A program made the position numbers and the translations under genes. Below are positions 5,259 through 61,647 of a DNA stretch of 64,000 bases, piece after piece. The notes beneath the pieces are model-generated. The model saw only the letters and a list, made by a program, of their open reading frames with translations. It ran no database searches and was not told the DNA's origin. The DNA lies in IMG/VR virus record IMGVR_UViG_3300023049_000005, positions 62,001 to 126,000 of that record; one strand, given 5' to 3'. Numbering within the stretch: the stretch's first letter is position 1; the number at the start of each line of letters is the position of its first letter.

Positions 5259-5729
5259 ATGAACATTTTAAAGTTTTTCAGGTGGCAAGGATTTAAGAAA
5301 GTTCCTAAGAAATACTTTACACAAGAATCGTTCGCTTATAGTGTTGAACACAGGGAATGTTGGAGTGAATATAACGGACTTCGAGAAGATCTTAGTAAAA
5401 TTTGGTTCGAAATAAAAGAAGTTAGTAAACGTGAAGCAGAAGGATATAGGAGAACAGCAAGACTCTTGTTTGATCCTGTTAGGCACAATTGTCTTAGTTT
5501 ACAACTAAACGAAAAGGAAATAGTATATATATTCTGTAATAATCAAATGTCATATTCTATATTAATGATAAATAACGAAGATGGGATTTTCACAAGGGCG
5601 TATGAATTTATGTTAGAAGATCACGGAACAGAAAACTCATTTAACAAAAATTTAAAATCTGTAATTGGTACAACAAGATACAGAGATTATGTATTAACTC
5701 AAATTTTTAAAAAAGAAGAAAAGGTATGA
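5259..5729 (+). CDS. hypothetical protein, C-terminal motif family
   Basis: RDYVLTQIF near C-terminus. Confidence 0.6.
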   Translation: MNILKFFRWQGFKKVPKKYFTQESFAYSVEHRECWSEYNGLREDLSKIWFEIKEVSKREAEGYRRTARLLFDPVRHNCLSLQLNEKEIVYIFCNNQMSYSILMINNEDGIFTRAYEFMLEDHGTENSFNKNLKSVIGTTRYRDYVLTQIFKKEEKV

Positions 5730-6649
5730 ACACAAAGGTATTTAGTTTAAAGAATTCAAGAGAGATCGGAAAGAAGATCACAAACATCGATTTGATGACA
5801 ACAAAACAATTCTCTGATGGAGAAATAAAAGTCGAAATCGAAGAAAGCGTTAGAAGTAATAGGGTGTTTGTTATTGGGTCACTAACTACCTCTGATGATA
5901 TTATCGAATTAATGATGGTGGGTGATGCTTTAAGAAGGGCAAGCGCAAAAGAAATTATTGCAGTCGTTCCTTACTTAGCCTATATGCGTCAGGATAGAAA
6001 GGATAAACCTAGAACAGCAATCGGTTCTAAAGTGATGGCAAATATGATCGAGATCTATTATGATCAAATCATCACTATGGATTTACACTCAACACAAATC
6101 GAAGGATTCTTTAATATACCTGTTACGCATATTAATTGTGCTACAATATTTGAAATCTATATTAGAAAAAACTTTGACCTTAGTAACGTGATCATTGTTT
6201 CTCCTGATGTTGGGGGGGCAAAAAGAGCAAAGAAGTTGAGTTCAAAAATGGGGCTTCCATTGGCTATTATTAACAAAGAGAGAAAGATAGCTAATGAAAT
6301 ATCTTCTATGGAATTAATAGGTGATGTTAATAGTAAAGATGTGATCATATTAGATGATATGGTTGATACTGCAGGTTCTTTATGTAAAGCAAGCGATTTG
6401 TTAATTGAAAACGGTGCGAATAAGGTTTGGGGTTGTGCAACACATGGTGTTTTATCAGGGGAAGCACATAATAGAATATTAAATTCGAGTTTAGAGAAAT
6501 TAATTTGCACTGATACTATTAAGATAAAAGATAATGAAAAGATAGAGATACTAAGCTGTTCAGACCTAATTAAGAAAACTATTGAAACTATTGAGAGTGG
6601 AAATAGTATAAATAGTTTAGTAAATGATGAAACTTTTCTCGTTAATTAG
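5726..6649 (+). CDS. prs: ribose-phosphate pyrophosphokinase
   Basis: FSDGE, PYLAYMRQDR, DLHS.QI.GFF, VSPDVGG, DDMVDTAGS. Confidence 0.97.
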   Translation: MNTKVFSLKNSREIGKKITNIDLMTTKQFSDGEIKVEIEESVRSNRVFVIGSLTTSDDIIELMMVGDALRRASAKEIIAVVPYLAYMRQDRKDKPRTAIGSKVMANMIEIYYDQIITMDLHSTQIEGFFNIPVTHINCATIFEIYIRKNFDLSNVIIVSPDVGGAKRAKKLSSKMGLPLAIINKERKIANEISSMELIGDVNSKDVIILDDMVDTAGSLCKASDLLIENGANKVWGCATHGVLSGEAHNRILNSSLEKLICTDTIKIKDNEKIEILSCSDLIKKTIETIESGNSINSLVNDETFLVN

Positions 6650-6722: not shown

Positions 6723-7583
6723 ATGAATAAATCCAACGAAAGTTATCTATTTAACATAGAACAAAAAGCAAGAATGTTCAAAGAAAAGACAAAAAAGGAT
6801 TTTTCGGATTTCTACGAAAAATATTTCCCTAAATTAGTTTTCTACAACAACAACATTTTAAAAGACGAAGAAGCAGCAAAAGACATCGCAACAGATGTGA
6901 TGCTTAAATCTCTTTATAAAATCGATGATTATGATCCTAACAAAGCAAGGTTTTCTACATGGTTGTTTACCATCTCAAAAAACGAGTGTTTTCAATACAA
7001 AAAGAATCAAGCTGATAAATTAATATCAGTTGATAAATTTGTTGATGATGATGGAACTACTATTAAAGACTTCTTAAATGATTCATCTCTTGAAGACGAA
7101 GAAATATTCCAATCGAAAGAATTAGACGATAAGAAAGGGATGATTCTAAAGGAAAGAATAAAACAATTAAAAGAACCATATAGAGAAGTTATCTCTTTAA
7201 GAGAGATCGAACTTAGATCTTATAGAGATATTACTATTATCATGAGAGAAGAAAATGAAATCGAAATCGATGATTCTTATTTCATTACTGATCATATATT
7301 ACATATGGTAGACCCTGAGAAGAAAGAAGATAATGAGTTAATCAAATTTCATACTATCGATAGTGTATTGGATAAATACGGAGATCCTGTTGAATTCACT
7401 ATATTAGATATAGATAAAGATGGTCTTATATCTTGTATAAAATTACCTAAGGGGGAATATACTATCATAGGTGAAACTCCATATAACATTAGTACTATAA
7501 AATCTCAAATAAGAAACGGAAGGAAACTTTTACAGAACGCTGTAAAGGAAGAATTTGAAATCTTGGATAAAACATTTCAATAA
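6723..7583 (+). CDS. ECF-type sigma-70 factor with an insertion in region 4
   Basis: region 2 (AKDIATD..L; FSTWLFTISKN) and region 4 (SYRDI...STIKSQIRNGR). Confidence 0.85.
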   Translation: MNKSNESYLFNIEQKARMFKEKTKKDFSDFYEKYFPKLVFYNNNILKDEEAAKDIATDVMLKSLYKIDDYDPNKARFSTWLFTISKNECFQYKKNQADKLISVDKFVDDDGTTIKDFLNDSSLEDEEIFQSKELDDKKGMILKERIKQLKEPYREVISLREIELRSYRDITIIMREENEIEIDDSYFITDHILHMVDPEKKEDNELIKFHTIDSVLDKYGDPVEFTILDIDKDGLISCIKLPKGEYTIIGETPYNISTIKSQIRNGRKLLQNAVKEEFEILDKTFQ

Positions 7584-10656: not shown

Positions 10657-10689
10657 GATTTTTATGTCTAAAAATTAAACCAAATGATT

Positions 10690-10723
10690 AAAACCTCTAC
10701 TTGAATAAAGTAGAGGTTTTTTT
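10690..10723 (+). terminator. attenuator terminator upstream of the tRNA-His pair
   Basis: AAAACCTCTACTT-GAATA-AAGTAGAGGTTTTTTT. Confidence 0.85.
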
Positions 10724-10730
10724 GTTATAT

Positions 10731-10803
10731 GGTGTTCGTAGCTCAGGGGAAGAGCGTCTGTTTGTGACACAGAAGGTCGGGATCTCGGAATTCCTCGAAC
10801 ACC
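10731..10803 (+). tRNA. tRNA-His(GTG) with atypical T-arm
   Basis: G-1:C73, stem TCTGT/ACAGA, GTG at 10764-66; T-loop CTCGGAA. Confidence 0.75.
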
Positions 10804-10813
10804 CAAAATATAT

Positions 10814-10906
10814 GGTGATTGTAGCTGAATGGTATGTAGTATCTGTAAGAGAACAAGCACTTGGTTGTGACCCAAGAGGATGTCGGTTCGAGTCCGATCT
10901 TTCACC
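10814..10906 (+). tRNA. tRNA-His(GTG) with ~20-nt D-loop insertion
   Basis: G-1:C73, stem CTTGG/CCAAG, GTG at 10867-69, canonical TTCGAGT T-loop. Confidence 0.75.
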
Positions 10907-10923
10907 CAAAATATAAATGAAAA

Positions 10924-11139
10924 ATGGAATATTGTTATATATGCTTTAATGGAACAGAAGAAGAAATGGTGTGTGATACATGTGAAGAACATTATTGCGA
11001 AGATTGTTCGTATATCTTTTCATTACACTACCAATTTCAAAGAAGTAGGTGCTATGAGTGTGCTGATCAGAGTAGAGAATATCCATTGGATAAAGCTGAA
11101 ATAAGAGAAAGAAAAATTAATATGTTATTAGAAGTATGA
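10924..11139 (+). CDS. small Cys-rich zinc-finger protein, C-terminal motif family
   Basis: four CxxC pairs; ends RERKINMLLEV; its stop overlaps the ATG of leader 2 (ATGA). Confidence 0.75.
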   Translation: MEYCYICFNGTEEEMVCDTCEEHYCEDCSYIFSLHYQFQRSRCYECADQSREYPLDKAEIRERKINMLLEV

Positions 11140-11213
11140 GAACAGTAAGTAAAAATATCAAAGGTTTTAAAAAGTTTTTTAAGAAGAACTTTATTAGGGA
11201 CAATACATCCTGA
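11136..11213 (+). CDS. attenuator leader peptide 2 (Lys/Phe-rich) MRTVSKNIKGFKKFFKKNFIRDNTS
   Basis: 25 codons with 6 Lys (3 AAA, 3 AAG) and 4 Phe; contains TATTAGGG, complementary to the terminator 5' arm. Confidence 0.8.
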   Translation: MRTVSKNIKGFKKFFKKNFIRDNTS

Positions 11214-11236
11214 TCGGAAATGATTAATAAATGTAT

Positions 11237-11270
11237 AAGCCCTAATAGAATATCTGTTAGGGCTTTTTTT
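11237..11270 (+). terminator. attenuator terminator upstream of the Lys/Phe tRNA array
   Basis: AAGCCCTAATAGA-ATA-TCTGTTAGGGCTTTTTTT. Confidence 0.85.
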
Positions 11271-11274
11271 ATAT

Positions 11275-11348
11275 CCCCTCTTAACTCAGTTGGCTAGAGT
11301 ACCGTGCTTTTAACACGGGAGTCGCAAGTTCGAGCCTTGTAGGGGGGA
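11275..11348 (+). tRNA. tRNA-Lys(TTT)
   Basis: cloverleaf; CCGTG-CTTTTAA-CACGG. Confidence 0.92.
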
Positions 11349-11356
11349 CAAAATAT

Positions 11357-11444
11357 GCAGGTGTATCCGTAGTTGGTCGAACGGTCCCGCCTTTTAAGCG
11401 GATGAGTGAAAGCTCCAACGTGGGTTCGAATCCCACCACCTGCA
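11357..11444 (+). tRNA. tRNA with Lys(TTT) anticodon and long class-II-type variable arm
   Basis: GCAGGTG/CACCTGC acceptor, CCGC-CTTTTAA-GCGG, extra arm GAGT-GAAA-GCTC, A73. Confidence 0.8.
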
Positions 11445-11449
11445 CAAAC

Positions 11450-11522
11450 GGTGATATAGCTCAGTTGGTAGAGCAGTGGATTGAAGATCCACGTGTCGGG
11501 GGTTCAAGTCCCTCTATCACCA
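11450..11522 (+). tRNA. tRNA-Phe(GAA)
   Basis: cloverleaf; GTGGA-TTGAAGA-TCCAC. Confidence 0.93.
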
Positions 11523-11530
11523 CAACATAT

Positions 11531-11604
11531 TCCCTCGTAGCTCAGTTGGTTAGAGCTACCGACTTTTAATCGGTAAGTCACAGGTTCGAGTCCTGTCGGG
11601 GGAA
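11531..11604 (+). tRNA. tRNA-Lys(TTT)
   Basis: cloverleaf; ACCGA-CTTTTAA-TCGGT. Confidence 0.93.
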
Positions 11605-11609
11605 CATAT

Positions 11610-11681
11610 GGAAACTTAGCTGAGACGGTTTAGCGGAAGGTTGAAGACCTTCAGAGGTGGGTTCGATCCCCACAGTTTCCA
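11610..11681 (+). tRNA. tRNA-Phe(GAA)
   Basis: cloverleaf; GAAGG-TTGAAGA-CCTTC. Confidence 0.9.
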
Positions 11682-11687
11682 CAATAT

Positions 11688-11761
11688 TCCTTCGTAGCTC
11701 AGTTGGCTAGAGTAACTGACTCTTAATCAGTGGGTCACAGGTTCGAGTCCTGTCGGGGGAA
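11688..11761 (+). tRNA. tRNA-Lys(CTT)
   Basis: cloverleaf; ACTGA-CTCTTAA-TCAGT. Confidence 0.93.
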
Positions 11762-11762
11762 C

Positions 11763-11853: not shown

Positions 11854-12978
11854 TCAAATAATTATTATACCGTCTCTATTAGGCGAAACGCTTAAGATTT
11901 TTATTCTCTGATGGAGATTATCTTGTATATAATTAATATATTGTCTAAAGTTAGGATCTTCTAAATCTGCTTTAACCCATGATTTGAAATCATAATATTT
12001 ACCACCACAATAAATTTTAAGTGGGGTTATATTTTCTAGTACATCAGATTTAGTCATAATTAAATCAGTTACTCCATTTAATTCTATACTCTCTTTTAAT
12101 TCATCTAAGTTTAACCAACCACATCTTCTTGGTCTGCCTGTTGTAGCACCAAACTCCCCACCTGCCTTCTGTATTCTTTCGCCAAGTTGATTTTTTAATT
12201 CAGTTTTCATATCACCATTACCAACTCGTGTTAAATATGATTTAAACACACCATATACTTTACCAACACTCTGAGGTGGCATTGCCAACCCTACACATGC
12301 ACCTGAACTTACTGTATTTGATGAAGTAACATATGGATAAGATCCATGATCAATATCTAACATAGTACCTTGTGCGCCCTCTGCTAGTATTTCACCTTCT
12401 TGGTTTCTTAACCAATTAGACTTAACGATATTTAATGTTTTAAGAAATTCCATACCTACTCTAAAATGTTCGAACTCAAGGAATTCATCTTGGTCTTTAC
12501 CCATTAAATCAACAGGTTCTATATTTAGATCGTTTCCAATAAAATCCACAACTCTATAACCTTCTCGGTATATTTTATCTCGATAACAAGGTCCGATCCC
12601 CTTTGGGGTACTACCTATGGTTGACACATTCTCTTTATCTTCCATAAAATGGAAAGGAGTCACTACGTGTGCGTTTTCTGAAATGAAAATTCTCTCTCTT
12701 GCGTTGGGTATATGTTCTTCAACTTCTTTTATTTCTTGCATCAATTGAAATGGGTCGATAACCATACCATTACCCAAAAAATTCTTTGTGTGTTCATGTA
12801 CTATACCACTTGGTATTAAGTGTAAAACTATTTTTATTCCATTATGATATATCGTATGTCCTGCGTTTGCACCGCCCTGATATCTAGCAACAATATCATA
12901 TTTTTTAGACAACATATCTGTTATCTTTCCTTTTCCTTCGTCTCCAAATTGAAGCCCTACTAATACGTCCATAAACAA
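11854..12978 (-). CDS. purA: adenylosuccinate synthetase
   Basis: GLQFGDEGKGK, GGANAGHT, EGAQG, GATTGRPRRCGW. Confidence 0.97.
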   Translation of the reverse strand: MFMDVLVGLQFGDEGKGKITDMLSKKYDIVARYQGGANAGHTIYHNGIKIVLHLIPSGIVHEHTKNFLGNGMVIDPFQLMQEIKEVEEHIPNARERIFISENAHVVTPFHFMEDKENVSTIGSTPKGIGPCYRDKIYREGYRVVDFIGNDLNIEPVDLMGKDQDEFLEFEHFRVGMEFLKTLNIVKSNWLRNQEGEILAEGAQGTMLDIDHGSYPYVTSSNTVSSGACVGLAMPPQSVGKVYGVFKSYLTRVGNGDMKTELKNQLGERIQKAGGEFGATTGRPRRCGWLNLDELKESIELNGVTDLIMTKSDVLENITPLKIYCGGKYYDFKSWVKADLEDPNFRQYINYIQDNLHQRIKILSVSPNRDGIIII

Positions 12979-13051: not shown

Positions 13052-13726
13052 ATGATTAAGAACTTTAAACAATTTATGATAGAAGCAACTTCATATCATA
13101 AATTAAATGATGATGATGAATATAATATTACGAAGACTATAAGAGATGATGGACATAATTATCAATATTGTGATGGTATATTATACGAACTTTCGGGGAA
13201 TGATACGAAGGTTAGTGTAGATGAAGTAGAACAAACAGAAGAAAATATGGTTTATTCAGATCAAATCAAAAGGTATATACAATATTTTAACGAAGGTGGT
13301 ATAACACAAACTTTCCCTGTTCAATCAAGTCCACTAGGCGACTGTACTAATTTAGAAGCTATGTTAGAGTATTTAGATGAACCTGATAATTTTGATATGG
13401 CTTGGGATCTTTTATCTAAATATCACAGGAAGTTATTTGATATGGATAAATTTGATATCGTAAGTGATCCTGATTCATTTGGGTTTAATGATGAAATGAA
13501 GCTATCACAAATAACTAATATAAAAGATTTAGACGATGCTTATAATGAAGATATAATGGAAGATGAAGACAGAGAAGGTGACTATGATGAAGAATTGTAC
13601 TTAGGGTTTAGTACTATATTAGAATATTGGAAAGAAAACAAAGAGTATACACTTACTGATTTTAATCATAGGTTCGCTGCTTTAGTAGAGATGGGTAGAA
13701 AATATATACTAGTAGAAGAGGTATAA
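13052..13726 (+). CDS. acidic protein with possible ParB/Srx-like motif and CTS-like N-terminus
   Basis: DFNHRFAAL resembles the ParB DGxHR box; MIKNFKQFMIE. Confidence 0.5.
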   Translation: MIKNFKQFMIEATSYHKLNDDDEYNITKTIRDDGHNYQYCDGILYELSGNDTKVSVDEVEQTEENMVYSDQIKRYIQYFNEGGITQTFPVQSSPLGDCTNLEAMLEYLDEPDNFDMAWDLLSKYHRKLFDMDKFDIVSDPDSFGFNDEMKLSQITNIKDLDDAYNEDIMEDEDREGDYDEELYLGFSTILEYWKENKEYTLTDFNHRFAALVEMGRKYILVEEV

Positions 13727-14946: not shown

Positions 14947-14997
14947 TATTAACTAAGTTATGTTTTTAATATATAAGAAAAATAACCCCTTAGGATT

Positions 14998-15621
14998 ATG
15001 ACAATATATGATTTACTAAAAGAATACGGATATGATGCAAATGACTTAAAAGCGAGATTTAAGAATAAGCAAATTGAATTGAATGGCGAAGTAGTGGATA
15101 AAAATGAAAAGATTGGTTTTGTAAAAGAAGTTTTTAGTCAAGGATTTTTTATGGAAAAGCTATATGAATTACCATTTTATCCTGATTTCTCAGATCAATT
15201 AATTTTTATCGGTATTGAAAATTTAATACATGGAGAAAGTAATATCAAAAATGAGATGACTGAATTCTTAAAAGATTATAATATGTTAAAAGTATCTAAA
15301 ACTAAAGCTATTTTCTTTAGTACTTTTGATGAAAAACCTGAAGGTGATACAATAAAAATTCAATTCCATGTTGACACTAAAGGTAAGTATGAGCAAGAGT
15401 ATGAAATACCTGAGGAAAAGGATGAATCAGAAGTTATCGATAAGCTAAAAGCTGATATCGATAAAGTAGAAAAACAATTATCAAACCCAGGTTTTGTTAA
15501 CAACGCACCTAAGTTTAAAGTAGATGCTGCTAAGAACAGATTAGAAACTTTAAAGAAAAAGTTAGCTGATATGGGCGTAAATGAATCTAAAGGTATTAAG
15601 AGATTTAAAGACTTTAACTAA
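14998..15621 (+). CDS. S4-like domain fused to a ValRS C-terminal coiled-coil arm
   Basis: KQLSNPGFVNNAPKFKV matches the ValRS C-terminal arm; N-terminus resembles a TyrRS S4 domain. Confidence 0.65.
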   Translation: MTIYDLLKEYGYDANDLKARFKNKQIELNGEVVDKNEKIGFVKEVFSQGFFMEKLYELPFYPDFSDQLIFIGIENLIHGESNIKNEMTEFLKDYNMLKVSKTKAIFFSTFDEKPEGDTIKIQFHVDTKGKYEQEYEIPEEKDESEVIDKLKADIDKVEKQLSNPGFVNNAPKFKVDAAKNRLETLKKKLADMGVNESKGIKRFKDFN

Positions 15622-15917: not shown

Positions 15918-16376
15918 ATGACAGAAAATCAATTAAAAAATATCTGTAATTTTTCATTCATTTTTTTATCCTTAAATATTTATAAAGAGAGTGATATTTA
16001 TATTTTAGGAAAGTGGAAAGCTATAATTGATGATGGGGATAGAATTATTGTTGATGATAAAAATAATCCTATTATATACGAAGAAGATATCGTTCCCCAT
16101 TATATGTTTGGATCAGTAGTTTTAGATTCGAAATTTATTTCTATTTTCTCTTTATTGTCTGATATAAAAGAGCTATATAGAGATGTCAAATTTACTAGAA
16201 GACCATTTACATTAGATAACTTATTAGAAATTTATAGAAAATATATTGATATAGAGCTTGTCAATAACCATTATACTGATTTTGTTATTCATGCGAATCT
16301 ATTACAGTCTAGAAATGAGTGGTTAGAATTTCCTATTAATAGTAGAACATATACCTTAGAATTGTTTACTGATTGA
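15918..16376 (+). CDS. hypothetical protein (start revised to 15918)
   Basis: TACTTTTG 4 nt before the ATG at 15918. Confidence 0.55.
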   Translation: MTENQLKNICNFSFIFLSLNIYKESDIYILGKWKAIIDDGDRIIVDDKNNPIIYEEDIVPHYMFGSVVLDSKFISIFSLLSDIKELYRDVKFTRRPFTLDNLLEIYRKYIDIELVNNHYTDFVIHANLLQSRNEWLEFPINSRTYTLELFTD

Positions 16377-16725
16377 GAACTTTATTTAAGTGAGATAACC
16401 CGTAATATATCTCGGTTACTCTTACTTTTATAACAGCTTGCCTACCTTGGTTATTGTAATTAGCGTTCTTTTTCTTGATAAGTGCAGTTAACCATATGTA
16501 ATCACCACGACTAATATCTTTAGGTACAGACATATCAAAAGTAACTGCGGACTCATCTATTTCACTTTCTTCTAGGTTTTCTTTCTCACTAGTAGATGGA
16601 TCTTCATCTAATACATCAATGATGTGATCGATTTCCCATTCACTAGGATCAAACTTTTCTCCATCTGACTCTTCTTCTGATAAAGAGAGGTCAAAGTCTT
16701 TGAATTTTTTAATATTATCTTTCAT
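16366..16725 (-). CDS. acidic protein with CTS-like N-terminus
   Basis: MKDNIKKFKDF; TATATATA 4 nt upstream. Confidence 0.6.
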   Translation of the reverse strand: MKDNIKKFKDFDLSLSEEESDGEKFDPSEWEIDHIIDVLDEDPSTSEKENLEESEIDESAVTFDMSVPKDISRGDYIWLTALIKKKNANYNNQGRQAVIKVRVTEIYYGLSHLNKVLNQ

Positions 16726-23480: not shown

Positions 23481-24515
23481 TTACTTATTGAACCTAATGA
23501 ATGCGTTTTGTGTCATATGAACATATTCTGCCTTTCCTATAAATTCAACGAGATTGCGTTTACCACAATAACTCATTGCGCTTTTTAAATAGTCTCTGAA
23601 ATTCTCAGTCCAACCACTAAGAGTATATTCTACTTTGCTATACTTAGTAATACCCTCACTAGTGGTTAGTTTTTTCTTTCCCCATTTCTTTTGAACTTCT
23701 TTAGTGGACATTCCTCTATAATATGAGAATATAATTTCTCCTTCTTTAAGAAGTTTTTCGGCTTTGTTGTTAGTTATCTCTATGTAGTTATCTTTTTCTA
23801 ATATGTATTTAGGTGTACATGATTCTAATGTTTTGTTTAGAATCCCACCTAACATAATATAATTTGCGCCAACCGCTAATGCTTTAATAATATCACTGAA
23901 GTTTCTAAACCCACCATCAGCTACTATCTTAGTATCATATCCTTTAGATCTCTTGATCTTAGCACACTCTTCTACCAATGATCCCATAGGATAATGTACT
24001 GATGTGTTTGCACTAGTCGTACAAGCAGACCCACCGCCTATACCACAACGCACATAGTCTACACCTATTTTACCATATTCTCTAAAGGTTTCAGGGTTAG
24101 CTATATTACCTATCATTAATTCTTTATCAGGGAACTTCTCTTTGTATTCCTTGGATAGATCCAATAATTTTTTCATATGACCATTAGCAACATCTACTAA
24201 TAATTTTTGTGGTGGGTTTTGGTTAATGCTAATAATATCTTCGAATTCTGATATACTGACAGAGATAAAATACTTATCTACGTCTTCGTTTTTCCATACA
24301 CTATTAGTATCTTCTGTTCTTGGTATACATACCTCAAATCCCCTTTCTAAGAATTTATCATAGTTTTCCATATCTACTACTGTATCCATGGGTGATACGA
24401 CTAAGGGTAATTTGCCCCCTTTATAGTAGATGTTTACTTCACTTCTAGATTCTATATCAGAGATTGCTGCAGGAACAATAGTAATATCATTCCAATCGAA
24501 CTTTAAATTATCCAT
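23481..24515 (-). CDS. GMP reductase / IMP dehydrogenase family enzyme
   Basis: SPMDTV, VDVANGH, GIGGGSACTT, IVADGG, YRGMST. Confidence 0.9.
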   Translation of the reverse strand: MDNLKFDWNDITIVPAAISDIESRSEVNIYYKGGKLPLVVSPMDTVVDMENYDKFLERGFEVCIPRTEDTNSVWKNEDVDKYFISVSISEFEDIISINQNPPQKLLVDVANGHMKKLLDLSKEYKEKFPDKELMIGNIANPETFREYGKIGVDYVRCGIGGGSACTTSANTSVHYPMGSLVEECAKIKRSKGYDTKIVADGGFRNFSDIIKALAVGANYIMLGGILNKTLESCTPKYILEKDNYIEITNNKAEKLLKEGEIIFSYYRGMSTKEVQKKWGKKKLTTSEGITKYSKVEYTLSGWTENFRDYLKSAMSYCGKRNLVEFIGKAEYVHMTQNAFIRFNK

Positions 24516-26562: not shown

Positions 26563-27039
26563 ATGAAAATAATTAAACCATTCAGTAAATTTTTAGAATC
26601 ACATGAATTTACATTAGACAAAGGAAGTAAATTTTTCGATAAAGTATACTTTCCTAATATAGCTATTCTCCCTAAAGAGAATGAGGTTTCCTTCTCATAC
26701 CAATCTCCACATAATTATGATCTAGAAATCGATATTAGATTTGATATCAGAACAGGAAACTTTACAAGAGGAACAATCGGTCATTTAGTAAAAGGATGGT
26801 CATTTGATATAGGTAAAGGTCATAAAGAAATTAGTGGGTTCGAAGATGATAGTGAACATTTCGAAACACTAATAAAGATATCACAACAAGCAGTAAGAGA
26901 AGAGTTAAAACAATTACAAGAAGTAGCATCAAAAGAACCTACTTTAAAAGCAGAAGGTGATCTATATTATGATACTGACTTCTTGTTTAATACTACTGTT
27001 GATATAATCAAAACAAGTGCCTATAAAGGTATGTTTTAA
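26563..27039 (+). CDS. hypothetical protein with CTS-like N-terminus
   Basis: MKIIKPFSKFLES; AATATATA 4 nt upstream. Confidence 0.6.
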   Translation: MKIIKPFSKFLESHEFTLDKGSKFFDKVYFPNIAILPKENEVSFSYQSPHNYDLEIDIRFDIRTGNFTRGTIGHLVKGWSFDIGKGHKEISGFEDDSEHFETLIKISQQAVREELKQLQEVASKEPTLKAEGDLYYDTDFLFNTTVDIIKTSAYKGMF

Positions 27040-35690: not shown

Positions 35691-37937
35691 ATGAAAAACG
35701 TATTAATCATTGAACATAATCCTACTTCATTAAAACCCATTAATGAATCAGCAGGAAAAGGTCAAGAAGATAAGTATACATTAGGAGGCGTATTTACAGA
35801 ATTTGACAAAAAGAATAGAAACGATAGGGTCTATACTTGGAGTAAGTTCGAACCTGCATTAAACGAATTAAATGAAAGAATCAGCACAATGGGTGTATAC
35901 GGTGAGTATGATCATCCCGATACTTTTGATACTTCATTAAAGAATGCATCACACATGGTTGAAACGGCTTCTTATGACGAAAAAAACAATTGTGTTACAG
36001 GAAAAATCAGATTACTTAATACTCAGTGGGGTAAAGAAGCAAAAGCATTGGTTGAAGATAATTCACCTTTATTCGTTTCTTCGAGAGCTGCAGGTATTAC
36101 AGAAGGTAATGGTGAAGTAACACTTAAAAAATTATTCACATATGATATTGTGGCAGATCCAGGATTTTCCTCTGCTAGAATGCAATCATTGAATGAATCT
36201 ATGGGCTATTCATCAAATTCCAACTTTCAAATATATGAAATGGATGATGAAACAAAAATTAATCAATTATTTGAAATGAACAAAAATGATATGGTAACAA
36301 AACAGCAAATGGTAGATTACTCTGAGTATTTAGTAGAAAACATCAAAGAGGTGAAAGCTAAAATCAACGAATCTATCAAAACAGGTCAAATTCAACCTAA
36401 AAAATTAAATGAATTAACACAGTATTACGAAAGAATGCTTGAAGAACAAAATAAGATGACTAAGTACTTAGATTACTTAGCTGAAAATTTACAAGTTGTA
36501 GTAAAAGAAAACATAGAATTAAAAGAAAGTAATTCTAAGTTAGAAAAAACTACTAACAACCTTATTAAGCATAATGATTATTTAGCTGAAAACTTAGAGA
36601 AGTCTATTGAATTCTCTGATTATATTGCTGAGGAATTAGATAAGTCTGTAGAATACAGTGAGTATATCGCTGAGGAATTAGATAAGTCTATCCAATATGG
36701 TGAGTATATCGCTGAGGAATTAGATAAGTCTATCCAATATGGTGAATACATTGCTGAAAACTTAAACAAATCTATTGAATTCTCTGATTATTTAGCTGAG
36801 AATTTAGATAACTCAATCGTATATTCTGAATATTTAGCTGAAAACATTGATACTAATATCAAGTACTCTGAATACATTGCTGAGAATTTAGATAGCGGTT
36901 TAGCATACACTGATTATGTTGCTGAACAATTAGATAAGTCTATTGAATACAGCAAAATGATTACAGAAAAATTAAACGAATCATCTAGTAAATTATTTGA
37001 AAGCGTTGAGGGCGAAGAAATGGATGGATTTCCATCACCTGATATCGTAGGTCTTTCTGAACTAGAAATGGATATGGAAGAAGATGAAGATGAGGATGAA
37101 GATAATTTGGATATCAACGTTGATGTTGATGTTGAAATTGAAGGATCTGAGGATGACGTAAACTGCAGAGTAGTTTGTGATGATGACGAAGATGTAAATA
37201 TAGATGATACTCCCGAATTAGAAGAAGGTGAAACAGAAGAAATTATTTCTGATGAGCTTGATGAAGAAGAAGAGGAAATGGAAGAAAAGGAAGAATTAGA
37301 AGAAGCAATTTCTGAAGAAGTTTCACAAGAAGAAGCACACGACGAAGATAAAGACGAGTGTAAAGACTGTGAAGAAGAAAAAGAAGAAGAAGAAGAAGAA
37401 GATTTAATGATGGAAAATAATCTATCAAAATCTATCGACCAATTAATATTAGAAGCTAAAAAACGAGAAGCTTCTAAGACAAACGAACCTAATTTCTTGT
37501 CGTTTTTAAATAAAGATCAGTTAGATTCATTCTACGCTTTAGAGAACGATGATAGAGAATTAGTTATTGCCCATATAAACGAGAAGGGTAATTATTATTC
37601 TACAAGTGATGTACTAACTCTTATGAACGAAGCATTAGCTACGAAAGAGAAGAGTTTAGAGGAACGTTTAGTCGATGAAATGCCTGAGGAAGTTAAGGAC
37701 AAATGGGAAAAGATTACAGAATCTGCAAAGAACTCAATATTGAGTCAAGCTAGATTACATCCTACTACTAATTGGAATGAAGCGACTATGGAGCATTTTT
37801 GGTTAACTCGTAAGTTCCCTGCGATCAGAGAGTCAAACCGTGAATTGATCAACAAAGAAGATAGATTAATCCTAGAGGATAGTTTATCAGATGATGCGAT
37901 GAATTCAATTATGGAGAAATTTAATTCAATTAAATAA
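35691..37937 (+). CDS. prohead protease (gp21-like) fused to a scaffold/core domain
   Basis: NRNDRVY, GEYDHP, VSSRAAG, TYDIVADPGF; then 14-aa repeats and an acidic region. Confidence 0.88.
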   Translation: MKNVLIIEHNPTSLKPINESAGKGQEDKYTLGGVFTEFDKKNRNDRVYTWSKFEPALNELNERISTMGVYGEYDHPDTFDTSLKNASHMVETASYDEKNNCVTGKIRLLNTQWGKEAKALVEDNSPLFVSSRAAGITEGNGEVTLKKLFTYDIVADPGFSSARMQSLNESMGYSSNSNFQIYEMDDETKINQLFEMNKNDMVTKQQMVDYSEYLVENIKEVKAKINESIKTGQIQPKKLNELTQYYERMLEEQNKMTKYLDYLAENLQVVVKENIELKESNSKLEKTTNNLIKHNDYLAENLEKSIEFSDYIAEELDKSVEYSEYIAEELDKSIQYGEYIAEELDKSIQYGEYIAENLNKSIEFSDYLAENLDNSIVYSEYLAENIDTNIKYSEYIAENLDSGLAYTDYVAEQLDKSIEYSKMITEKLNESSSKLFESVEGEEMDGFPSPDIVGLSELEMDMEEDEDEDEDNLDINVDVDVEIEGSEDDVNCRVVCDDDEDVNIDDTPELEEGETEEIISDELDEEEEEMEEKEELEEAISEEVSQEEAHDEDKDECKDCEEEKEEEEEEDLMMENNLSKSIDQLILEAKKREASKTNEPNFLSFLNKDQLDSFYALENDDRELVIAHINEKGNYYSTSDVLTLMNEALATKEKSLEERLVDEMPEEVKDKWEKITESAKNSILSQARLHPTTNWNEATMEHFWLTRKFPAIRESNRELINKEDRLILEDSLSDDAMNSIMEKFNSIK
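36578..36952 (+). repeat. 42-bp (14-aa) tandem repeats EYIAEELDKSI.Y.
   Basis: about nine units, including a near-exact 42-bp duplication at ~36660-36745. Confidence 0.85.
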
Positions 37938-39830: not shown

Positions 39831-41453
39831 ATGGAACAAAAGTTACTTGAAATATTTGAAAGTCCTCATAGGATGAGGGAAACGTATGTTAAAAAACATC
39901 ACCCAAGTCTATATGATAGTATTATATCATATGTGGATTTTGACATTTCTTTCAAAGAAAAGCTTTGGTATTACTATAATAAACTAGAAGAAAAAATTAC
40001 ATGTAAGTGTGGTAAGGAAACTACGTTCAATAAGAATTTTAAAGACGGTTATAAAAAATATTGCTCTGCTAAATGCGCACAGACAGCCGAATCTACTAAA
40101 GAAAAAAGAAAGAAAACTACTTTACATAAATATGGTGTTGATAATGTAGCTAAAAGTCAGAAAATTAAAGACAAGACCGAAGAAACCAATATCGAAAGGT
40201 ATGGTCATAGATCTACGTTTCAAAATAAAGAAGTTCAGAGCAAATGGAAGGAAAATATTAAAAACAAATATGGCGTTGATCATATCTTCCAATCAGAGGA
40301 AGTAAAAGGAAAGATACAAGATACTATGAAGGAAAGGTATGGTGGACATTATACCAAAACCGATCATTATACAGATAAGCTTGGTGAAATTGGATTCAAG
40401 GAACTAATAAGGAAAAAGAAGTTAGATAAACACAAAGATTTTTTTAAAACACATGGTTATGAGTTTATAGAAATTAAAGATTATAGGAAATTCACCATAA
40501 AAAAGGATGATGATATATTCGAAATATATTGGGAAACTTTTATAAATAGGCTAGAAAACGGATATGAAATATCTACTAATATAAACCCATTATATTATAC
40601 AGGTCAAAGTGAAAAGGAAAAGGAACTCATATCATGGATTAGGACATTGGGTGTAGAAATCGATGAATCTAATAGAAAAATACTAAATGGTAAAGAAATA
40701 GATATATTTCTACCTGAATATAAATTAGGAATAGAATTCAATGGTTTATATTGGCATAGTGAAATGAATAAAGAAAAGAAACATCATATAAACAAAACAA
40801 AACAGTTAAATGAATTAGGAATTAGTTTGGTACACGTATGGGAGGATGATTGGGATCATAAAAAAAATATAATACAATCTATTATTCTTAATAAGTTAAA
40901 TAAAATATCTAATAAGATATATGCTAGAAAGTGTATTATAAAAGAAGTAAATAGTAAGGAAACTAATTCCTTTTTAGATAAAAACCATATACAAGGTAAG
41001 TCAAAGGCTAATATTAAATTAGGTCTATATTATAGAGATGAATTAGTTAGCCTAATGACGTTTGGTTATCGTAATATAAACGGAACTAAGCAATATGAAC
41101 TGATTAGGTTTTGTAATAAAATAAATAATATTGTCGTTGGGTCAGCTTCTAAATTATTTAAATATTTTATTAATAATTATAATTATGATAACATCTTATC
41201 ATACTCTGATATAAGTATGTTTGATGGCAAATTATATGAAATGTTAGGATTCGAAAACATGGGGGAAACTTCTCTAAACTATTGGTGGGTTGTTGATAAA
41301 AAGAGGTATCATCGGTTTACATATAATAAGAAAAAGTTGATCAAAGAAGGACATGACCCAAACTTGACAGAAAAGGAAATTATGTATTCTCTAGGTAATT
41401 ATAGAATTTGGGGATGTGGTCAAATTAGGTGGGTATATAAAAAACGATATTAA
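39831..41453 (+). mobile_element. free-standing Hef-like homing endonuclease gene
   Basis: Zn-ribbon, KYGV repeats, EIDIFLP...IEFNGLYWH..HVWEDDW nuclease, C-terminal GNAT-like fold. Confidence 0.75.
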
Positions 41454-43533: not shown

Positions 43534-43540
43534 AATGGAG

Positions 43541-43913
43541 TGGAGATGGAGGGAGTCGAACCCTCGTCACAGACACTTTAGTATAATACTTTCTACAAGT
43601 TTAGTTTACATAGTTAGGGTAAACACCTTAGTTAAACTTATTTTTTTAAACTGTTCTAATCAAACCAAAATTCAGTCCTTCTTATAATAACTGCTAAGAA
43701 GTTTGCAGCTTGGAGTTTTGTCGGTTGCTTAGACAGCTAATACAAGTTCTCCGTCTTGTACAGATTCCGTAGAATCTAATGCGTCTAAAACGTCAATCTT
43801 TTCAGATACTACGTTTAATTGTTTATCTACTAATTTATTAATCGGACACTTTAATAGACAATCCGATACTTGCTTACACTATCTGAAAATGACGCTCTAA
43901 TCCAGTCACCCCC
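43541..43913 (-). ncRNA. ssrA: tmRNA
   Basis: 5' GGGGGTGACTGGATT; 3' GACGAGGGTTCGACTCCCTCCATCTCCA; G3.U70 pair; internal tag frame 43812-43729. Confidence 0.9.
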
Positions 43914-51946: not shown

Positions 51947-52615
51947 ATGTTATTTAAATATCAACAATTTTTAAAAGAGAATAATAGTCTTAATATTTGG
52001 TATCATGGTACACCCGATGGTAGAGGGATAGTCAAAGATGGATTCTCACAAAATACTAAAAGTGTGGAATATTTAAAAGATATTGAAGGTTATAAAGATA
52101 TTATGAACCAATTAGAACAAGCTAGAATAGATGGTAAAGATAAATACTTTGAGATATTAGATAAGATATCTGATTTCAAAGACAATTTCACTTTTAATAA
52201 ACCTATATTTTTAAGTAATAATTATAGAGTTGCTTCTACGTATGCTACTGAGAAAAGAGCATTTGATTACCAAGAATCTATACCGAAAGTATTTAAAATG
52301 GGTATAAAAAACGAAGGTAAGGTATTAACTATATATGCTCACAATAAACGATTTAGATTTATTGATTCTGATTTTATAAAAAAGGGGTTAATGGACGGTG
52401 GTATAAGTTCAGAAAAAGCTGAAGAAACTATAAGTAAATTCAATTTCTTTTCAAGAAAAGATGGGATATCGATAGATACTATTGGAGCTATTGCTACTTA
52501 TTTAGGATTTGATACAGTAGATGTAGTTGGTGTATTAGATAGTTACCACGGTGGTACTGTAAAATCTACGGTAAGAATGGTATTTGATTCGAAGAATATA
52601 GAGATATTAAACTAA
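51947..52615 (+). CDS. ADP-ribosyltransferase-like protein with CTS-like N-terminus
   Basis: WYHGT...IFLS....VA.TYA...GFD.V...VF pattern; MLFKYQQFLKEN. Confidence 0.6.
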   Translation: MLFKYQQFLKENNSLNIWYHGTPDGRGIVKDGFSQNTKSVEYLKDIEGYKDIMNQLEQARIDGKDKYFEILDKISDFKDNFTFNKPIFLSNNYRVASTYATEKRAFDYQESIPKVFKMGIKNEGKVLTIYAHNKRFRFIDSDFIKKGLMDGGISSEKAEETISKFNFFSRKDGISIDTIGAIATYLGFDTVDVVGVLDSYHGGTVKSTVRMVFDSKNIEILN

Positions 52616-59922: not shown

Positions 59923-61647
59923 ATGCTATCAAAGGAATTCATAAAAGAGTTCAATTTCAATAATAAGTCAGGTAAGATGTCTAGTTCTAAATATGTATCA
60001 AAGAACTATGCTGCGGATTATGATATTATTATAGGTAATATTAAAGAAGATATCTCATTTAAAGAGAAAGTATATCTAACTGTTAATGATATTAACCATT
60101 CTCCTAATTGTAAGAATCCTAATTGTAATGACAAGGTAAAATTCAGAAATACTACTTTAGGGTATAGAGAGTATTGTTCTAATAAATGTATTGGTTCAGA
60201 TCCTAATATGATCAAAAGAAAAGAACAAAAGTCTTTAGAAAAGTTTGGCACAAAAACACCTGCCGAATCAGAAGTAATCAAACAAAAAATGATCAATACT
60301 AATAATAAATTATATGGTGGTAATTCTCCTATGTCAAATAAAGAAATTCAAGAGAAATCTAAGAAAACTTTAATGGGTAATTGGGGTGTAGAAAACCCTA
60401 ACAGACATAAAGATTTAACAGAAAAAAGAATTAAGAGTTTTAAAAAAAATATAGATCAGTTTAAGGCTTCTTTCAAAGAAACTAGCTTAAAGAAATATGG
60501 TGTGGAACACCATTGGATGGTTAAAGAAATACACGATAAAGGAATTAAAACTACTAATAAGAAAAAACTTCAAAAGGAAGAAACTAAAATTAAAAAGAGG
60601 ATACCAAGTGATTATAAATTACTTGGAATATTCAAAGAAAGTGAATTACATAACAGAACAAGTAGTAGGATGTTATGTAATAAGGGTCATGAATTTGTCA
60701 TAAATAATGATCTTTTATATCATAGGACAGTTAAAAACGATACAGTGATATGTACTGAATGTCATCCTCAAAATAATAGAAGTGTAAGTGGATTAGAATT
60801 ACAACTACTTAATTTCATCGAAGAAAGTTATGAAGGTGAAATCATAACTAATAATAGAACTATTATACCGCCACACGAAGTAGATATTTATCTACCTGAA
60901 ATCAAATTAGCTATTGAATTTAATGGTCTTTTTTGGCATAGTGAGATCAATAAGGACAAGTATTATCACTTCAATAAAACTAATGAAGCTGAGAAAGAAG
61001 GCATACAGATGTTACATATTTGGGAAGACGATTGGCTATTGAAGGATGATATAGTTAAATCTATGTTAAAGAATAAATTCAATAATACTCCTAATAAAGT
61101 ATTTGGTAGAAAATGTAAAATTAAAAAAGTTGGCTCTAAGGAATACAGAGAATTCTTAGATAATAATCATATACAAGGTTATTCTAATTCTACTTACTCG
61201 TATGGTTTGTATTATAACGAAAAATTAGTTAGTCTAATGACCTTTTCTAAACCAAGGAATATGATGGGACATAAAAGTAGAGATAATGTTTATGAGTTAG
61301 CTAGGTTTTGTAATAAGACTAATTACAATATAGTAGGTGGTGCTTCTAAATTATTTAAACACTTTATAAAAGAACATTCTCCTAAAGAAATATATTCTTT
61401 TAGTGATAGGTCATATTCTAATGGTAATCTTTATAAGATATTAGGGTTTGAATATAGTCACAGAAGTAAAATAAATTACCATTGGGTATTAAACAAAGAG
61501 AGAAAGCATAGATATAATTTTGCTAAACATAAACTAGTAGAAAAGGGATACGATCCCAATTTATCAGAAAGGGAAATTATGTATGAACAAGTGGGTGCTT
61601 ATAGAATATGGAATAGTGGTCAAGATAAGTGGGTTTATCACATATAG
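59923..61647 (+). mobile_element. free-standing Hef-like homing endonuclease gene (paralog of 39831..41453)
   Basis: same architecture: YCS.KC, KYGV repeats, EVDIYLP..IEFNGLFWH..HIWEDDW, GNAT-like C-terminus. Confidence 0.75.

What the first reader, a model, noticed from the sequence alone, without database searches (positions are those of the whole stretch)
14998..15621. Stand-alone fusion of two aminoacyl-tRNA-synthetase tRNA-binding modules
The C-terminal ~55 aa match the ValRS coiled-coil arm (LSNPGFVNNAP). The N-terminus resembles the TyrRS S4-like domain (DLLKEYGY...QIELNGEVV...MLKVSKTK). There is no catalytic domain, and it ends in the CTS-like peptide. It lies 3 kb from the tRNA operon and could be a tRNA chaperone or shield, or a synthetase modulator (T4 vs modifies ValRS).
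Basis: partly seen in the sequence, partly recalled or inferred. Interest (0 to 1): 0.6.

Follow-up and report, generated by a model that had tools for sequence, protein, structure and literature searches.

The report
Phage S4-like plus ValRS-arm protein
A lake-water jumbo phage encodes a small enzyme-less protein built from two modules that tRNA synthetases use to hold tRNA, and it belongs to a rare, uncharacterised family found only in tRNA-rich giant phages; it most likely grips tRNA-shaped RNAs, but this is untested.

Summary
ORF 14998-15621 (+) encodes a 207-aa protein.

- **C-terminal module.** Residues 144-191 are a genuine ValRS tRNA-binding arm. Pfam PF10458 scores 33.5 bits against a cut-off of 25.9. 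The best fold match of 48,161 chains is the arm of T. thermophilus ValRS.
- **N-terminal module.** Residues 1-110 have an S4 fold interrupted by a conserved ~45-aa helical insert. No S4 HMM is significant, but three structure libraries return almost only S4 domains (TyrRS C-domain, RqcP, YlmH, Hsp15, pseudouridine synthases).
- **No catalytic domain is present.**
- **Tail.** The disordered C-terminal tail carries I-K-R-F-K-D-F, a peptide also found at the N-termini of other proteins of this phage. It resembles the T4 capsid-targeting sequence.

The family has about 25 full-length members and about 35 stand-alone N-domain proteins. It is confined to metagenomic huge phages with many tRNAs. Family genes sit next to tmRNA genes, mini-synthetase genes or tRNA-repair genes.

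My best reading is a non-catalytic binder of L-shaped RNAs (tRNA or tmRNA). Three things argue for caution: the N-domain is acidic, RNA binding is untested, and the partner RNA is unknown. There is no similarity to T4 Vs.

I class it as a new domain combination of a known kind, of moderate interest.

The parts
14967..14975 (+). TAATATATA promoter-like element, 22 nt before the ATG
   Evidence: [AT]ATATATA lies within 60 nt upstream of 114 of 320 ORFs (AATATATA is 17-fold enriched). The same motif with a 20-32 nt leader precedes the protease, major head and sheath genes. It also lies ~9 nt before the 5' end of the tmRNA in L008 and L048. No sigma-70 consensus promoter or intrinsic terminator was found here. 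Its role as a promoter is inferred.
14998..15621 (+). CDS of the 207-aa protein P0001 (stop codon included)
   Evidence: 15 full-length relatives at 43-88% identity.
14998..15138 (+). S4-like core, first part (residues 1-47: two helices, then strands; signature LLKEYG...DLKARFKNKQIELNGE)
   Evidence: AF2 models. S4-only hit lists. Local matches of 46 residues at rmsd 2.8-3.0 A to eS4 and TyrRS 1h3e.
15139..15273 (+). Helical insert in the S4 fold (residues 48-92), holding the family's most conserved motif G-x-E-N-L-x-x-G-E-S-N-I-x-N-x-x-T-x-F-L-K
   Evidence: DSSP helices 48-56, 61-71, 73-79 and 86-91. Invariant residues G72, S81, N82, N85, T88 and L91, also conserved in the stand-alone N-domain proteins. 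That it is an insert is inferred from about 64 aligned S4 residues spread over model residues 1-110.
15274..15327 (+). Strands that complete the S4-like sheet (residues 93-110); the stand-alone N-domain proteins end here
15328..15417 (+). Acidic beta-hairpin linker (residues 111-140), present only in the fused form
   Evidence: Strands 118-125 and 129-136. Net charge -6. Absent from the ~105-aa stand-alone proteins.
15427..15570 (+). ValRS-type antiparallel coiled-coil arm (residues 144-191) with tip motif LSNPGFVNNAP
   Evidence: PF10458 at 33.5 bits, above 25.9. 1gax_A arm is the top fold match. Invariant K159, Q160, L161, N163, G165, F166, A170, P171, F173 and K174. The arm is mildly basic, pI 9.0.
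15574..15618 (+). Disordered basic tail (residues 193-207) ending in I-K-R-F-K-D-F-N
   Evidence: pLDDT below 50 for 195-207. [IV]-x-[RKN]-[FY]-x-[DN]-F is conserved in most relatives. The same peptide sits at the N-terminus of ORF 16366-16725(-) and similar peptides at the N-termini of other ORFs.
10732..11762 (+). Context: array of 8 tRNA genes (His x2, Lys x4, Phe x2), two of them with extra hairpins; candidate ligands (inferred)
43538..43913 (-). Context: phage tmRNA gene; candidate ligand (inferred from the adjacency seen in relatives)
   Evidence: Rfam RF00023 at 59.3 bits, above 47. A tmRNA lies directly downstream of family genes in L008 and L048, and 1.6 kb downstream in L009.

Best explanation
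P0001 is a non-catalytic adaptor that binds L-shaped RNAs, meaning tRNAs and/or the tRNA-like domain of tmRNA.

Proposed mechanism, all inferred:
- The ValRS-derived coiled-coil arm contacts the outer corner (D-loop/T-loop elbow) of the RNA, as it does in ValRS.
- The S4-like domain gives a second contact on the same RNA (anticodon-stem or variable-arm side, as in TyrRS or RqcP), or on a protein partner through its conserved acidic insert.
- The conserved aromatic C-terminal peptide docks the complex to a phage partner shared with about 15 other phage proteins.

Shown here: the two folds, their homology or fold class, the absence of an enzyme domain, conservation of the whole architecture, and restriction of the family to tRNA-rich huge phages with tRNA, tmRNA or synthetase neighbours.

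Inferred: RNA binding itself, which RNA is bound, and the consequence (escort, stabilisation or shielding of phage tRNAs or tmRNA during takeover of translation).
For: Arm. It belongs to PF10458 above the curated cut-off, and the best fold match is the tRNA-bound ValRS arm. Its tip motif is invariant across the family.

N-domain. Three structure libraries return essentially only S4 RNA-binding domains. The S4-type basic stretch K18-R20-K22-K24 with the N-G turn is kept, and R20, N29 and G30 are invariant.

Modularity. The N-domain exists alone in ~105-aa phage proteins. The arm exists in a different 130-aa protein of a 391-kb phage, directly upstream of a T4 Rnl1-type tRNA-repair ligase.

Context of family members:
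- a tmRNA gene 9 nt downstream in L008, adjacent in L048 and 1.6 kb downstream in L009, although the L008 and L009 proteins are only 45% identical;
- mini-LeuRS, Thg1 and a class II synthetase fragment within 4 kb in L002;
- split class II synthetase genes within 2 kb in L049;
- a CCA-adding enzyme and a phosphoesterase beside stand-alone N-domain genes;
- a tRNA array 3.2 kb away in the window.

tRNA content. All sufficiently large phage records with the family are tRNA-rich: 21, 49, 56 and 13 tRNA genes. The own genome also encodes tmRNA, SmpB, Rnl1, a CCA-adding enzyme and a mini-LeuRS.
Against: - RNA binding is untested.
- The protein is acidic overall (pI 5.2). The S4-like domain has net charge -4 and its insert -5, unlike canonical basic S4 domains.
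- Gene neighbourhoods are not conserved across the family. The tmRNA linkage is seen in one syntenic clade only, so it counts as about one independent observation.
- In the window itself the tmRNA is 28 kb away.
- All carriers are huge phages, which tend to have many tRNAs anyway, and no matched negative controls were run.
Confidence: 0.5

Rival explanations
1. Ribosome-rescue or trans-translation helper. The protein would work with the phage tmRNA and SmpB, or on split 50S subunits. Its S4-like domain would hold the P-site or peptidyl-tRNA (or the tmRNA tRNA-like domain), as RqcP, Hsp15, YlmH and MTRES1 do, and the arm would hold the elbow. This is a specific sub-case of RNA binding.
For: The tmRNA gene is immediately downstream of family genes in L008 and L048 and 1.6 kb downstream in L009. 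The four phage records with stand-alone ValRS-arm proteins that were searched for it all carry tmRNA. The own genome encodes SmpB. The best fold matches include the rescue factors YlmH, MTRES1, RqcP and Hsp15, and the top Atlas cluster is 'RQC P-site tRNA stabilizing factor'.
Against: Rescue-type S4 proteins are strongly basic, whereas this domain is acidic. TyrRS and pseudouridine-synthase S4 domains score equally well. The tmRNA linkage is confined to one clade and absent within +-5-8 kb in L002, L003, L049 and L050. It is 28 kb away in the window.
Confidence: 0.18
2. Trans-acting subunit or modulator of a synthetase. It would supply the tRNA-binding appendages missing from the phage's truncated synthetases (for example the 434-aa LeuRS-like core), or bind and modify host ValRS in the manner proposed for T4 Vs.
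For: The own genome encodes a 434-aa LeuRS-like core that lacks the editing and C-terminal tRNA-binding domains. Its 61%-identical orthologue lies 4 kb from the family gene in L002. Synthetase fragments lie next to the family gene in L049.
Against: The mini-LeuRS family is far larger than the P0001 family: thousands of proteins, with the best 120 all 410-616 aa and 59-95% identical, against about 40-60 members. It therefore does not generally need this protein. In the own genome the two genes are 82 kb apart. There is no similarity to T4 Vs or to any cultured-phage protein. No ValRS body is encoded: the only tRNA-synt_1 (class I synthetase) hit in the genome is the LeuRS-like gene.
Confidence: 0.12
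3. Virion-packaged (ejected) protein. The C-terminal F-x-x-F peptide would act like a T4 capsid-targeting sequence, so the protein would be loaded into proheads and delivered with the DNA. This is compatible with any of the RNA-binding roles.
For: - The T4 CTS is MKTYQEFIAE, with targeting residues 4 and 7 and processing residues 8 and 10 (PMC8442874; PMC9026906).
- The phage has a T4-type S77 prohead protease fused to a scaffold-like region with about 11 tandem Y-S-E-Y-I-A-E repeats.
- K-x-[FY]-x-x-[FY] peptides occur at 17 of 320 N-termini against 3.5 expected. 13 of the 17 have the TAATATATA-type upstream motif (Fisher p=0.001).
- The tail of P0001 is the same I-K-[KR]-F-K-D-F as the N-terminus of ORF 16366-16725(-).
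- P0001 shares its promoter motif and leader spacing with the protease, head and sheath genes.
Against: The T4 CTS is N-terminal and is cleaved, whereas here the motif is C-terminal with no [ILV]-x-E site. Several family members lack the tail (P0013, P0016, P0021). The upstream motif precedes 36% of ORFs, including a helicase, so it is not proof of late expression. N-terminal K/F richness is partly compositional in a 30% GC genome.
Confidence: 0.12
4. Not an RNA binder. The S4-like fold and the coiled-coil would have been re-used as a protein-protein scaffold or mimic, for example an acidic decoy that occupies a tRNA- or arm-binding site on a host protein.
For: The protein has overall pI 5.2, and the insert and linker are acidic. 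The most conserved part is the polar, acidic insert rather than the classical S4 RNA face. The conserved terminal peptide suggests protein docking.
Against: The arm tip motif, which contacts tRNA in ValRS, is invariant. The arm and tail are basic. The genomic context is consistently tRNA-related.
Confidence: 0.1

Closest known systems
C-terminal coiled-coil arm of valyl-tRNA synthetase (Pfam PF10458; T. thermophilus ValRS-tRNAVal, PDB 1GAX)
   Same: Sequence-level homology above the Pfam cut-off, the same helix-turn-helix hairpin, and the same L-x-N-x-x-F-x-x-x-A-P tip. In ValRS the arm touches the tRNA elbow (own knowledge of the 1GAX structure).
   Different: Here it is not attached to any synthetase body. 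It follows an S4-like domain and a beta-hairpin, and is followed by a conserved aromatic tail.
S4-fold RNA-binding domains: TyrRS C-terminal domain, RqcP/Hsp15/YlmH/MTRES1, RsuA/RluF N-domains, uS4/eS4
   Different: No S4 HMM is significant. There is a ~45-aa conserved helical insert in the middle of the fold. The domain is acidic rather than basic. The data do not say which S4 subfamily it derives from.
Free-standing tRNA-binding paralogues of synthetase appendages (Trbp111, Arc1p, EMAP II-type, CsaA)
   Same: The logic is the same: a synthetase-derived tRNA-binding module that lives as a separate non-catalytic protein and acts in trans (own knowledge).
   Different: Those use an OB fold (tRNA_bind), and no such domain is present here. 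This one combines an S4-like domain and a ValRS arm and is phage-encoded.
T4 Vs (valyl-tRNA synthetase modifier)
   Same: It is a small phage protein connected by name to ValRS.
   Different: There is no detectable sequence similarity: tblastn against 50,697 phage records found nothing at E<=0.01, and PHROGs gave nothing significant. There is no evidence that P0001 touches ValRS.
T4 capsid-targeting sequence (MKTYQEFIAE) of internal proteins
   Same: Aromatic residues three apart after basic residues. The phage has the T4-type prohead protease and scaffold repeats with Y-x-x-Y-I-A-E.
   Different: In P0001 the peptide is at the C-terminus and has no cleavage site. Packaging is untested.
130-aa ValRS-arm protein of a 391-kb phage (L010:9956-10348), found here
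   Same: It has a stand-alone PF10458 arm (31.1 bits) in a huge phage that also has tmRNA and tRNAs with extra variable-arm hairpins.
   Different: The arm is N-terminal and fused to an unrelated C-domain. The gene lies directly upstream of a T4 Rnl1-type RNA ligase. It has no S4-like domain.

Membership tests
Val_tRNA-synt_C domain (PF10458) | HMM score above the curated gathering cut-off | tested here: met
   33.5 bits against 25.9, E 5.2e-8, residues 147-190. 12 of 15 relatives carry the precomputed PF10458 hit.
Val_tRNA-synt_C domain (PF10458) | Antiparallel two-helix coiled-coil hairpin | tested here: met
Val_tRNA-synt_C domain (PF10458) | Binds the tRNA elbow | not testable with these tools
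   Needs binding assays or a protein-RNA structure.
Valyl-tRNA synthetase (enzyme) | Class I catalytic core (HIGH/KMSKS), editing and anticodon-binding domains | tested here: not met
   No tRNA-synt_1 or Anticodon_1 hit in P0001. The only tRNA-synt_1 (class I synthetase) hit in the genome is a LeuRS-like 434-aa gene 82 kb away.
S4 RNA-binding domain (PF01479 and clan) | HMM score above the cut-off | tested here: not met
   No S4 hit for P0001 at E<=10 or in the genome. Only sub-threshold S4_2 (3 members, best E 0.019), SYY_C-terminal (2 members) and S4 (1 member) hits among 33 family members.
S4 RNA-binding domain (PF01479 and clan) | Alpha-L fold: two helices packed on a small antiparallel sheet | tested here: met
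S4 RNA-binding domain (PF01479 and clan) | Basic RNA-binding surface | tested here: inconclusive
   The domain has net charge -4 and pI 5.0, but keeps K8, K18, R20, K22 and K24 on helices 1-2.
TyrRS C-terminal domain (PF22421) specifically | Closer to TyrRS C-domains than to other S4 domains | tested here: inconclusive
T4 Vs-type ValRS modifier | Sequence similarity to T4 Vs | tested here: not met
   No tblastn hit in 50,697 phage records and no significant PHROG.
T4-type capsid-targeting sequence | N-terminal about 10 residues, aromatic at positions 4 and 7, [IL]-x-E cleavage site | tested here: not met
   The aromatic i/i+3 pair is present, but the peptide is C-terminal and is followed by N and the stop codon. 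The N-terminal versions on other ORFs do fit.
OB-fold trans-acting tRNA-binding proteins (Trbp111/Arc1p) | tRNA_bind OB-fold domain | tested here: not met
   No such Pfam hit. The similarity is one of function only.

The most novel reading that the evidence does not exclude
The protein would be a dedicated reader or escort for the phage's own 'decorated' translation RNAs.

This phage and every other large record carrying the N-domain family encode class-I-anticodon tRNAs (Lys, Asn, Thr, Val, Cys, Glu, Asp, Met, Gln) that carry an extra GNRA- or UUCG-capped variable-arm hairpin. The own genome (G000) and the fused-family records G002 and G003 also carry a tmRNA; G005, G007 and G008 were not searched for one.

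An S4-like domain of the kind that TyrRS uses to grip a long variable arm, joined to an elbow-binding ValRS arm, could tell phage tRNAs from host tRNAs. It could then shield, deliver or sort them. It might even be carried in the capsid through its CTS-like tail, so that it acts before phage genes are expressed.
Probability: 0.15. Interest if true: 0.85.

Novelty: new variant of a known kind. Interest (0 to 1): 0.55.

Why it matters
Huge phages carry large sets of tRNAs, tmRNAs and synthetase fragments, and how these are used is largely unknown. Almost nothing is known about non-enzymatic proteins that might organise them.

A conserved, enzyme-less protein made only of tRNA-holding modules is a concrete and easily testable candidate for such an organiser. 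If it binds tRNA or tmRNA, it would extend the list of free-standing synthetase-derived tRNA binders to phages. It would also give a handle on how phage-encoded tRNAs are protected from, or told apart from, host tRNAs at a time when tRNA-targeting defence systems are being found widely.

If it does not bind RNA, it is an example of S4 and ValRS-arm folds re-used for protein docking.

Tried and rejected
- **Cultured-phage relatives.** megablast of 4.2 kb and tblastn of the protein against INPHARED found nothing. PHROGs gave nothing significant.
- **Profile against PDB sequences.** The full-length family profile returned only keratin coiled-coil noise. The N-domain profile gave eS4 at E 0.13.
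- **Mini-LeuRS as obligate partner.** I rejected this as a general explanation because that family is orders of magnitude larger than the P0001 family. The fragmentary related contigs gave no information. A single-sequence scan of the viral contigs for it found nothing.
- **Complex prediction.** The scaffold repeat region (P0206 200-450) with P0001 141-207 gave no verdict (score 0.00, controls not run). This is not evidence either way.
- **PurA-like neighbour as PurZ (Z-genome).** Not supported. The PurA models score 392 bits, and PurZ scores 146 bits against a cut-off of 300.
- **RNA evidence for expression.** Only lake-water DNA metagenomes hold the sequence and no RNA runs do.
- **Promoter and terminator scans.** The sigma-70 consensus promoter and intrinsic terminator scans around the gene gave nothing above chance.
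- **N-domain alignment scan.** The whole N-domain alignment was too divergent for the viral-contig scan. A subset alignment worked.

Full report
**Setting.** The window is bases 62001-126000 of a 270,756-bp IMG/VR virus record (CheckV 89% complete, 29.8% GC). The same DNA occurs in several lake-water metagenomes. The window carries a T4-like head and tail module: portal, S77-type prohead protease, major head protein, large terminase and sheath. It also carries a gp32-like protein, an ECF sigma factor of Bacteroidetes type and purine-metabolism genes. No cultured phage resembles the region or the protein.

**The observation.** ORF 14998-15621 (+) encodes 207 aa.

- **Supporting evidence for the S4 fold.** Foldseek local matches (46 residues, rmsd 2.8-3.0 A, eS4 and TyrRS 1h3e) agree. 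So do the ESM-Atlas shape search (RqcP, TyrRS, Hsp15 and SYY_C clusters), the language-model search, sub-threshold S4-clan hits in family members and an eS4 profile hit (E 0.13).

I conclude that residues 1-110 are an S4 fold interrupted by a ~45-residue helical insert (48-92). This is an inference from the secondary structure and the about 64 aligned residues. No catalytic domain is present. The refinement is that TyrRS is not distinguishable from other S4 subfamilies.

**The family.**
- Fifteen full-length relatives (186-232 aa, 43-88% identical) conserve both modules and, mostly, the tail. More distant full-length members (about 40%) appear in the exhaustive search.
- The N-domain also exists alone in ~100-120-aa proteins: 37 proteins at 90% clustering in 5.8 billion.
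- The most conserved element is the insert motif G-x-E-N-L-x-x-G-E-S-N-I-x-N-x-x-T-x-F-L-K.
- The arm tip K-Q-L-x-N-x-G-F-x-x-x-A-P-x-F-K is invariant.
- A different 130-aa protein in a 391-kb phage carries the arm alone (31.1 bits), directly upstream of a T4 Rnl1-type RNA ligase.

Both modules therefore behave as mobile units in huge phages.

**Charge.** The protein is acidic overall (pI 5.2). The S4-like domain has net charge -4, the insert -5 and the linker -6. The arm (pI 9.0) and the tail are basic. A local basic cluster (K8, K18, R20, K22, K24) survives on the classical S4 face. This is the main reason not to take RNA binding by the N-domain for granted.

**Context.**
- *In the window.* The gene lies 3.2 kb from an array of eight tRNA genes and 28 kb from a bona fide tmRNA (RF00023, 59.3 bits).
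- *Elsewhere in the genome.* There are 13 further tRNAs, SmpB, a T4 Rnl1-type ligase, a CCA-adding enzyme and a 434-aa LeuRS-like core without editing or C-terminal domains.
- *tmRNA linkage in relatives.* A tmRNA gene starts 9 nt after the family gene in L008, is adjacent in L048 and lies 1.6 kb downstream in L009. The L008 and L009 proteins are only 45% identical, but these loci are syntenic, so this is about one independent event.
- *Synthetase genes in relatives.* L002 has the mini-LeuRS orthologue (61% identical), Thg1 and a class II synthetase fragment within 4 kb. L049 has split class II synthetase genes within 2 kb.
- *Stand-alone N-domain genes.* They sit beside a phosphoesterase, a CCA-adding enzyme and a PurA-like gene.
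- *tRNA counts.* Phage records with the N-domain family carry 49, 56 and 13 tRNA genes. No matched controls were run.

**Regulation and the tail.** A motif [AT]ATATATA precedes 114 of 320 ORFs (AATATATA is 17-fold enriched). P0001 has it 22 nt before the ATG, the same arrangement as the protease, head and sheath genes. The motif also sits ~9 nt before the mature 5' end of the tmRNAs in L008 and L048, which supports a promoter role.

The tail I-K-R-F-K-D-F-N matches the N-terminal peptide of ORF 16366-16725(-). K-x-[FY]-x-x-[FY] peptides occur at 17 of 320 N-termini against 3.5 expected, and 13 of the 17 have the upstream motif. The T4 capsid-targeting sequence is MKTYQEFIAE, with targeting residues 4 and 7. 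The 748-aa protease-scaffold protein has about 11 tandem Y-S-E-Y-I-A-E-E-L-D-K-S-I-x repeats.

The tail may therefore be a docking peptide for the prohead core. However, it is C-terminal, lacks a cleavage site and is missing from some relatives. A complex prediction gave no verdict.

**Interpretation.** The common denominator of fold, homology and context is the L-shaped tRNA-like RNA.
- I commit to a non-catalytic tRNA/tmRNA binder (0.5).
- A ribosome-rescue or trans-translation role (0.18), a synthetase cofactor or modulator role (0.12) and capsid packaging (0.12) are more specific readings; packaging does not exclude an RNA-binding role.
- A pure protein-docking role (0.1) is the sceptical alternative.
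- The mini-LeuRS family is far too abundant relative to this family for an obligate partnership.
- There is no similarity to T4 Vs.

**Novelty.** Free-standing synthetase-derived tRNA binders are known (Trbp111, Arc1p and others; own knowledge). This S4-like-with-insert plus ValRS-arm architecture, and the N-domain family itself, carry no Pfam or PHROG annotation beyond the arm and appear undescribed. A text search for Val_tRNA-synt_C with phage found nothing relevant. It is a new variant of a known kind.

The most novel reading still open links the protein to the extra-hairpin tRNAs described under Noticed in passing.

Noticed in passing
window 11357-11445 (tRNA-Lys UUU, 89 nt); outside the window G000:C1:162434-162521 (Asn), 162784-162869 (Thr), 163140-163224 (Val), 163465-163551 (Cys): Five tRNAs with class-I anticodons carry an extra variable-arm hairpin (3-6 bp stem, mostly a GAAA/GUAA/UUCG-type loop). 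Most sit in the same array as a normal ~75-nt isoacceptor; no normal tRNA-Cys was called. Discriminator bases fit the anticodon identity (Asn G73, Cys U73). Similar decorated Lys, Gln, Glu, Thr, Cys, Met, Asp and Asn tRNAs occur in six other huge-phage records (G003, G004, G005, G007, G008, L003), and their stems covary. No paper on this was found in two text searches.
   Followed up: partly
window 10732-10803 and 10815-10906: Two tRNA-His(GUG) genes were missed by ARAGORN but found by Rfam. The second is 92 nt, with a 21-nt insertion in the D-loop. The ORF 10675-10992(-) that overlaps them is therefore probably spurious.
   Followed up: partly
window 43538-43913 (-); SmpB at G000:C1:248299-248718 (-): The phage encodes a tmRNA (RF00023, 59.3 bits, E 1e-20) and its own SmpB (172.5 bits). 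Related phages G002, G003 and G004 also carry a tmRNA.
   Followed up: partly
genome-wide; e.g. window 14967-14975, and upstream of 13052, 16725(-), 20243, 35691, 38033, 53281, 56007: The upstream motif [AT]ATATATA precedes 114 of 320 ORFs. In 49 of them it ends exactly 4 nt before the ATG, which would give leaderless or nearly leaderless mRNAs if it is a -10 element. A phage ECF-type sigma factor (window 6723-7583, best match a Bacteroidetes sigma-70 subfamily) could be its reader.
   Followed up: partly
window 35691-37937 (+): The prohead protease (S77, phrog_207) is fused to a scaffold-like region with about 11 tandem 14-residue repeats Y-S-E-Y-I-A-E-E-L-D-K-S-I-x, followed by a long poly-acidic stretch. 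The repeat mirrors the T4 CTS and cleavage motif Y-Q-E-F-I-A-E.
   Followed up: partly
window 13052-13726 (+), 16366-16725 (-), 26563-27039 (+), 51947-52615 (+), and others outside the window: About 17 ORFs begin with a T4-CTS-like peptide (for example MIKNFKQFMIE-A, MKDNIKKFKDF, MLFKYQQFLKE-N). They are candidate capsid-internal or ejected proteins.
   Followed up: partly
G000:C1:158971-160275 (outside the window; L004:1480-2784), just downstream of tRNA-Leu(UAA) at 157959-158044: A 434-aa LeuRS-like class I synthetase core has HIGH-like and KMSKS motifs but no CP1 editing domain or C-terminal tRNA-binding domain (leuS_bact 363 bits, below the 548 cut-off). The family is very abundant in metagenomes: 6,538 proteins at E<=1e-20, and the best 120 are all 410-616 aa and 59-95% identical.
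   Followed up: partly
L010:9214-11475 (391-kb phage G004): A three-gene run: an R2K ATP-grasp protein, a 130-aa protein with an N-terminal ValRS arm (31.1 bits), and a T4 Rnl1-type RNA ligase. This is a second, independent recruitment of the ValRS arm, next to a tRNA-repair enzyme.
   Followed up: partly
window 39831-41453 (+) and 59923-61647 (+): Two large paralogous HNH/homing-endonuclease-like ORFs (phrog_3339, E 1e-126 and 1e-118) sit directly downstream of the major head gene and the sheath gene.
   Followed up: no
window 5726-6649 (+), 11854-12978 (-), 23481-24515 (-): Purine and nucleotide auxiliary genes: PRPP synthetase, an adenylosuccinate synthase of PurA type (not PurZ: 146 bits against a 300 cut-off), and a GMP-reductase/IMPDH-like protein. 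A PurA-like gene also lies about 2 kb from stand-alone N-domain genes in L044 and L045.
   Followed up: partly
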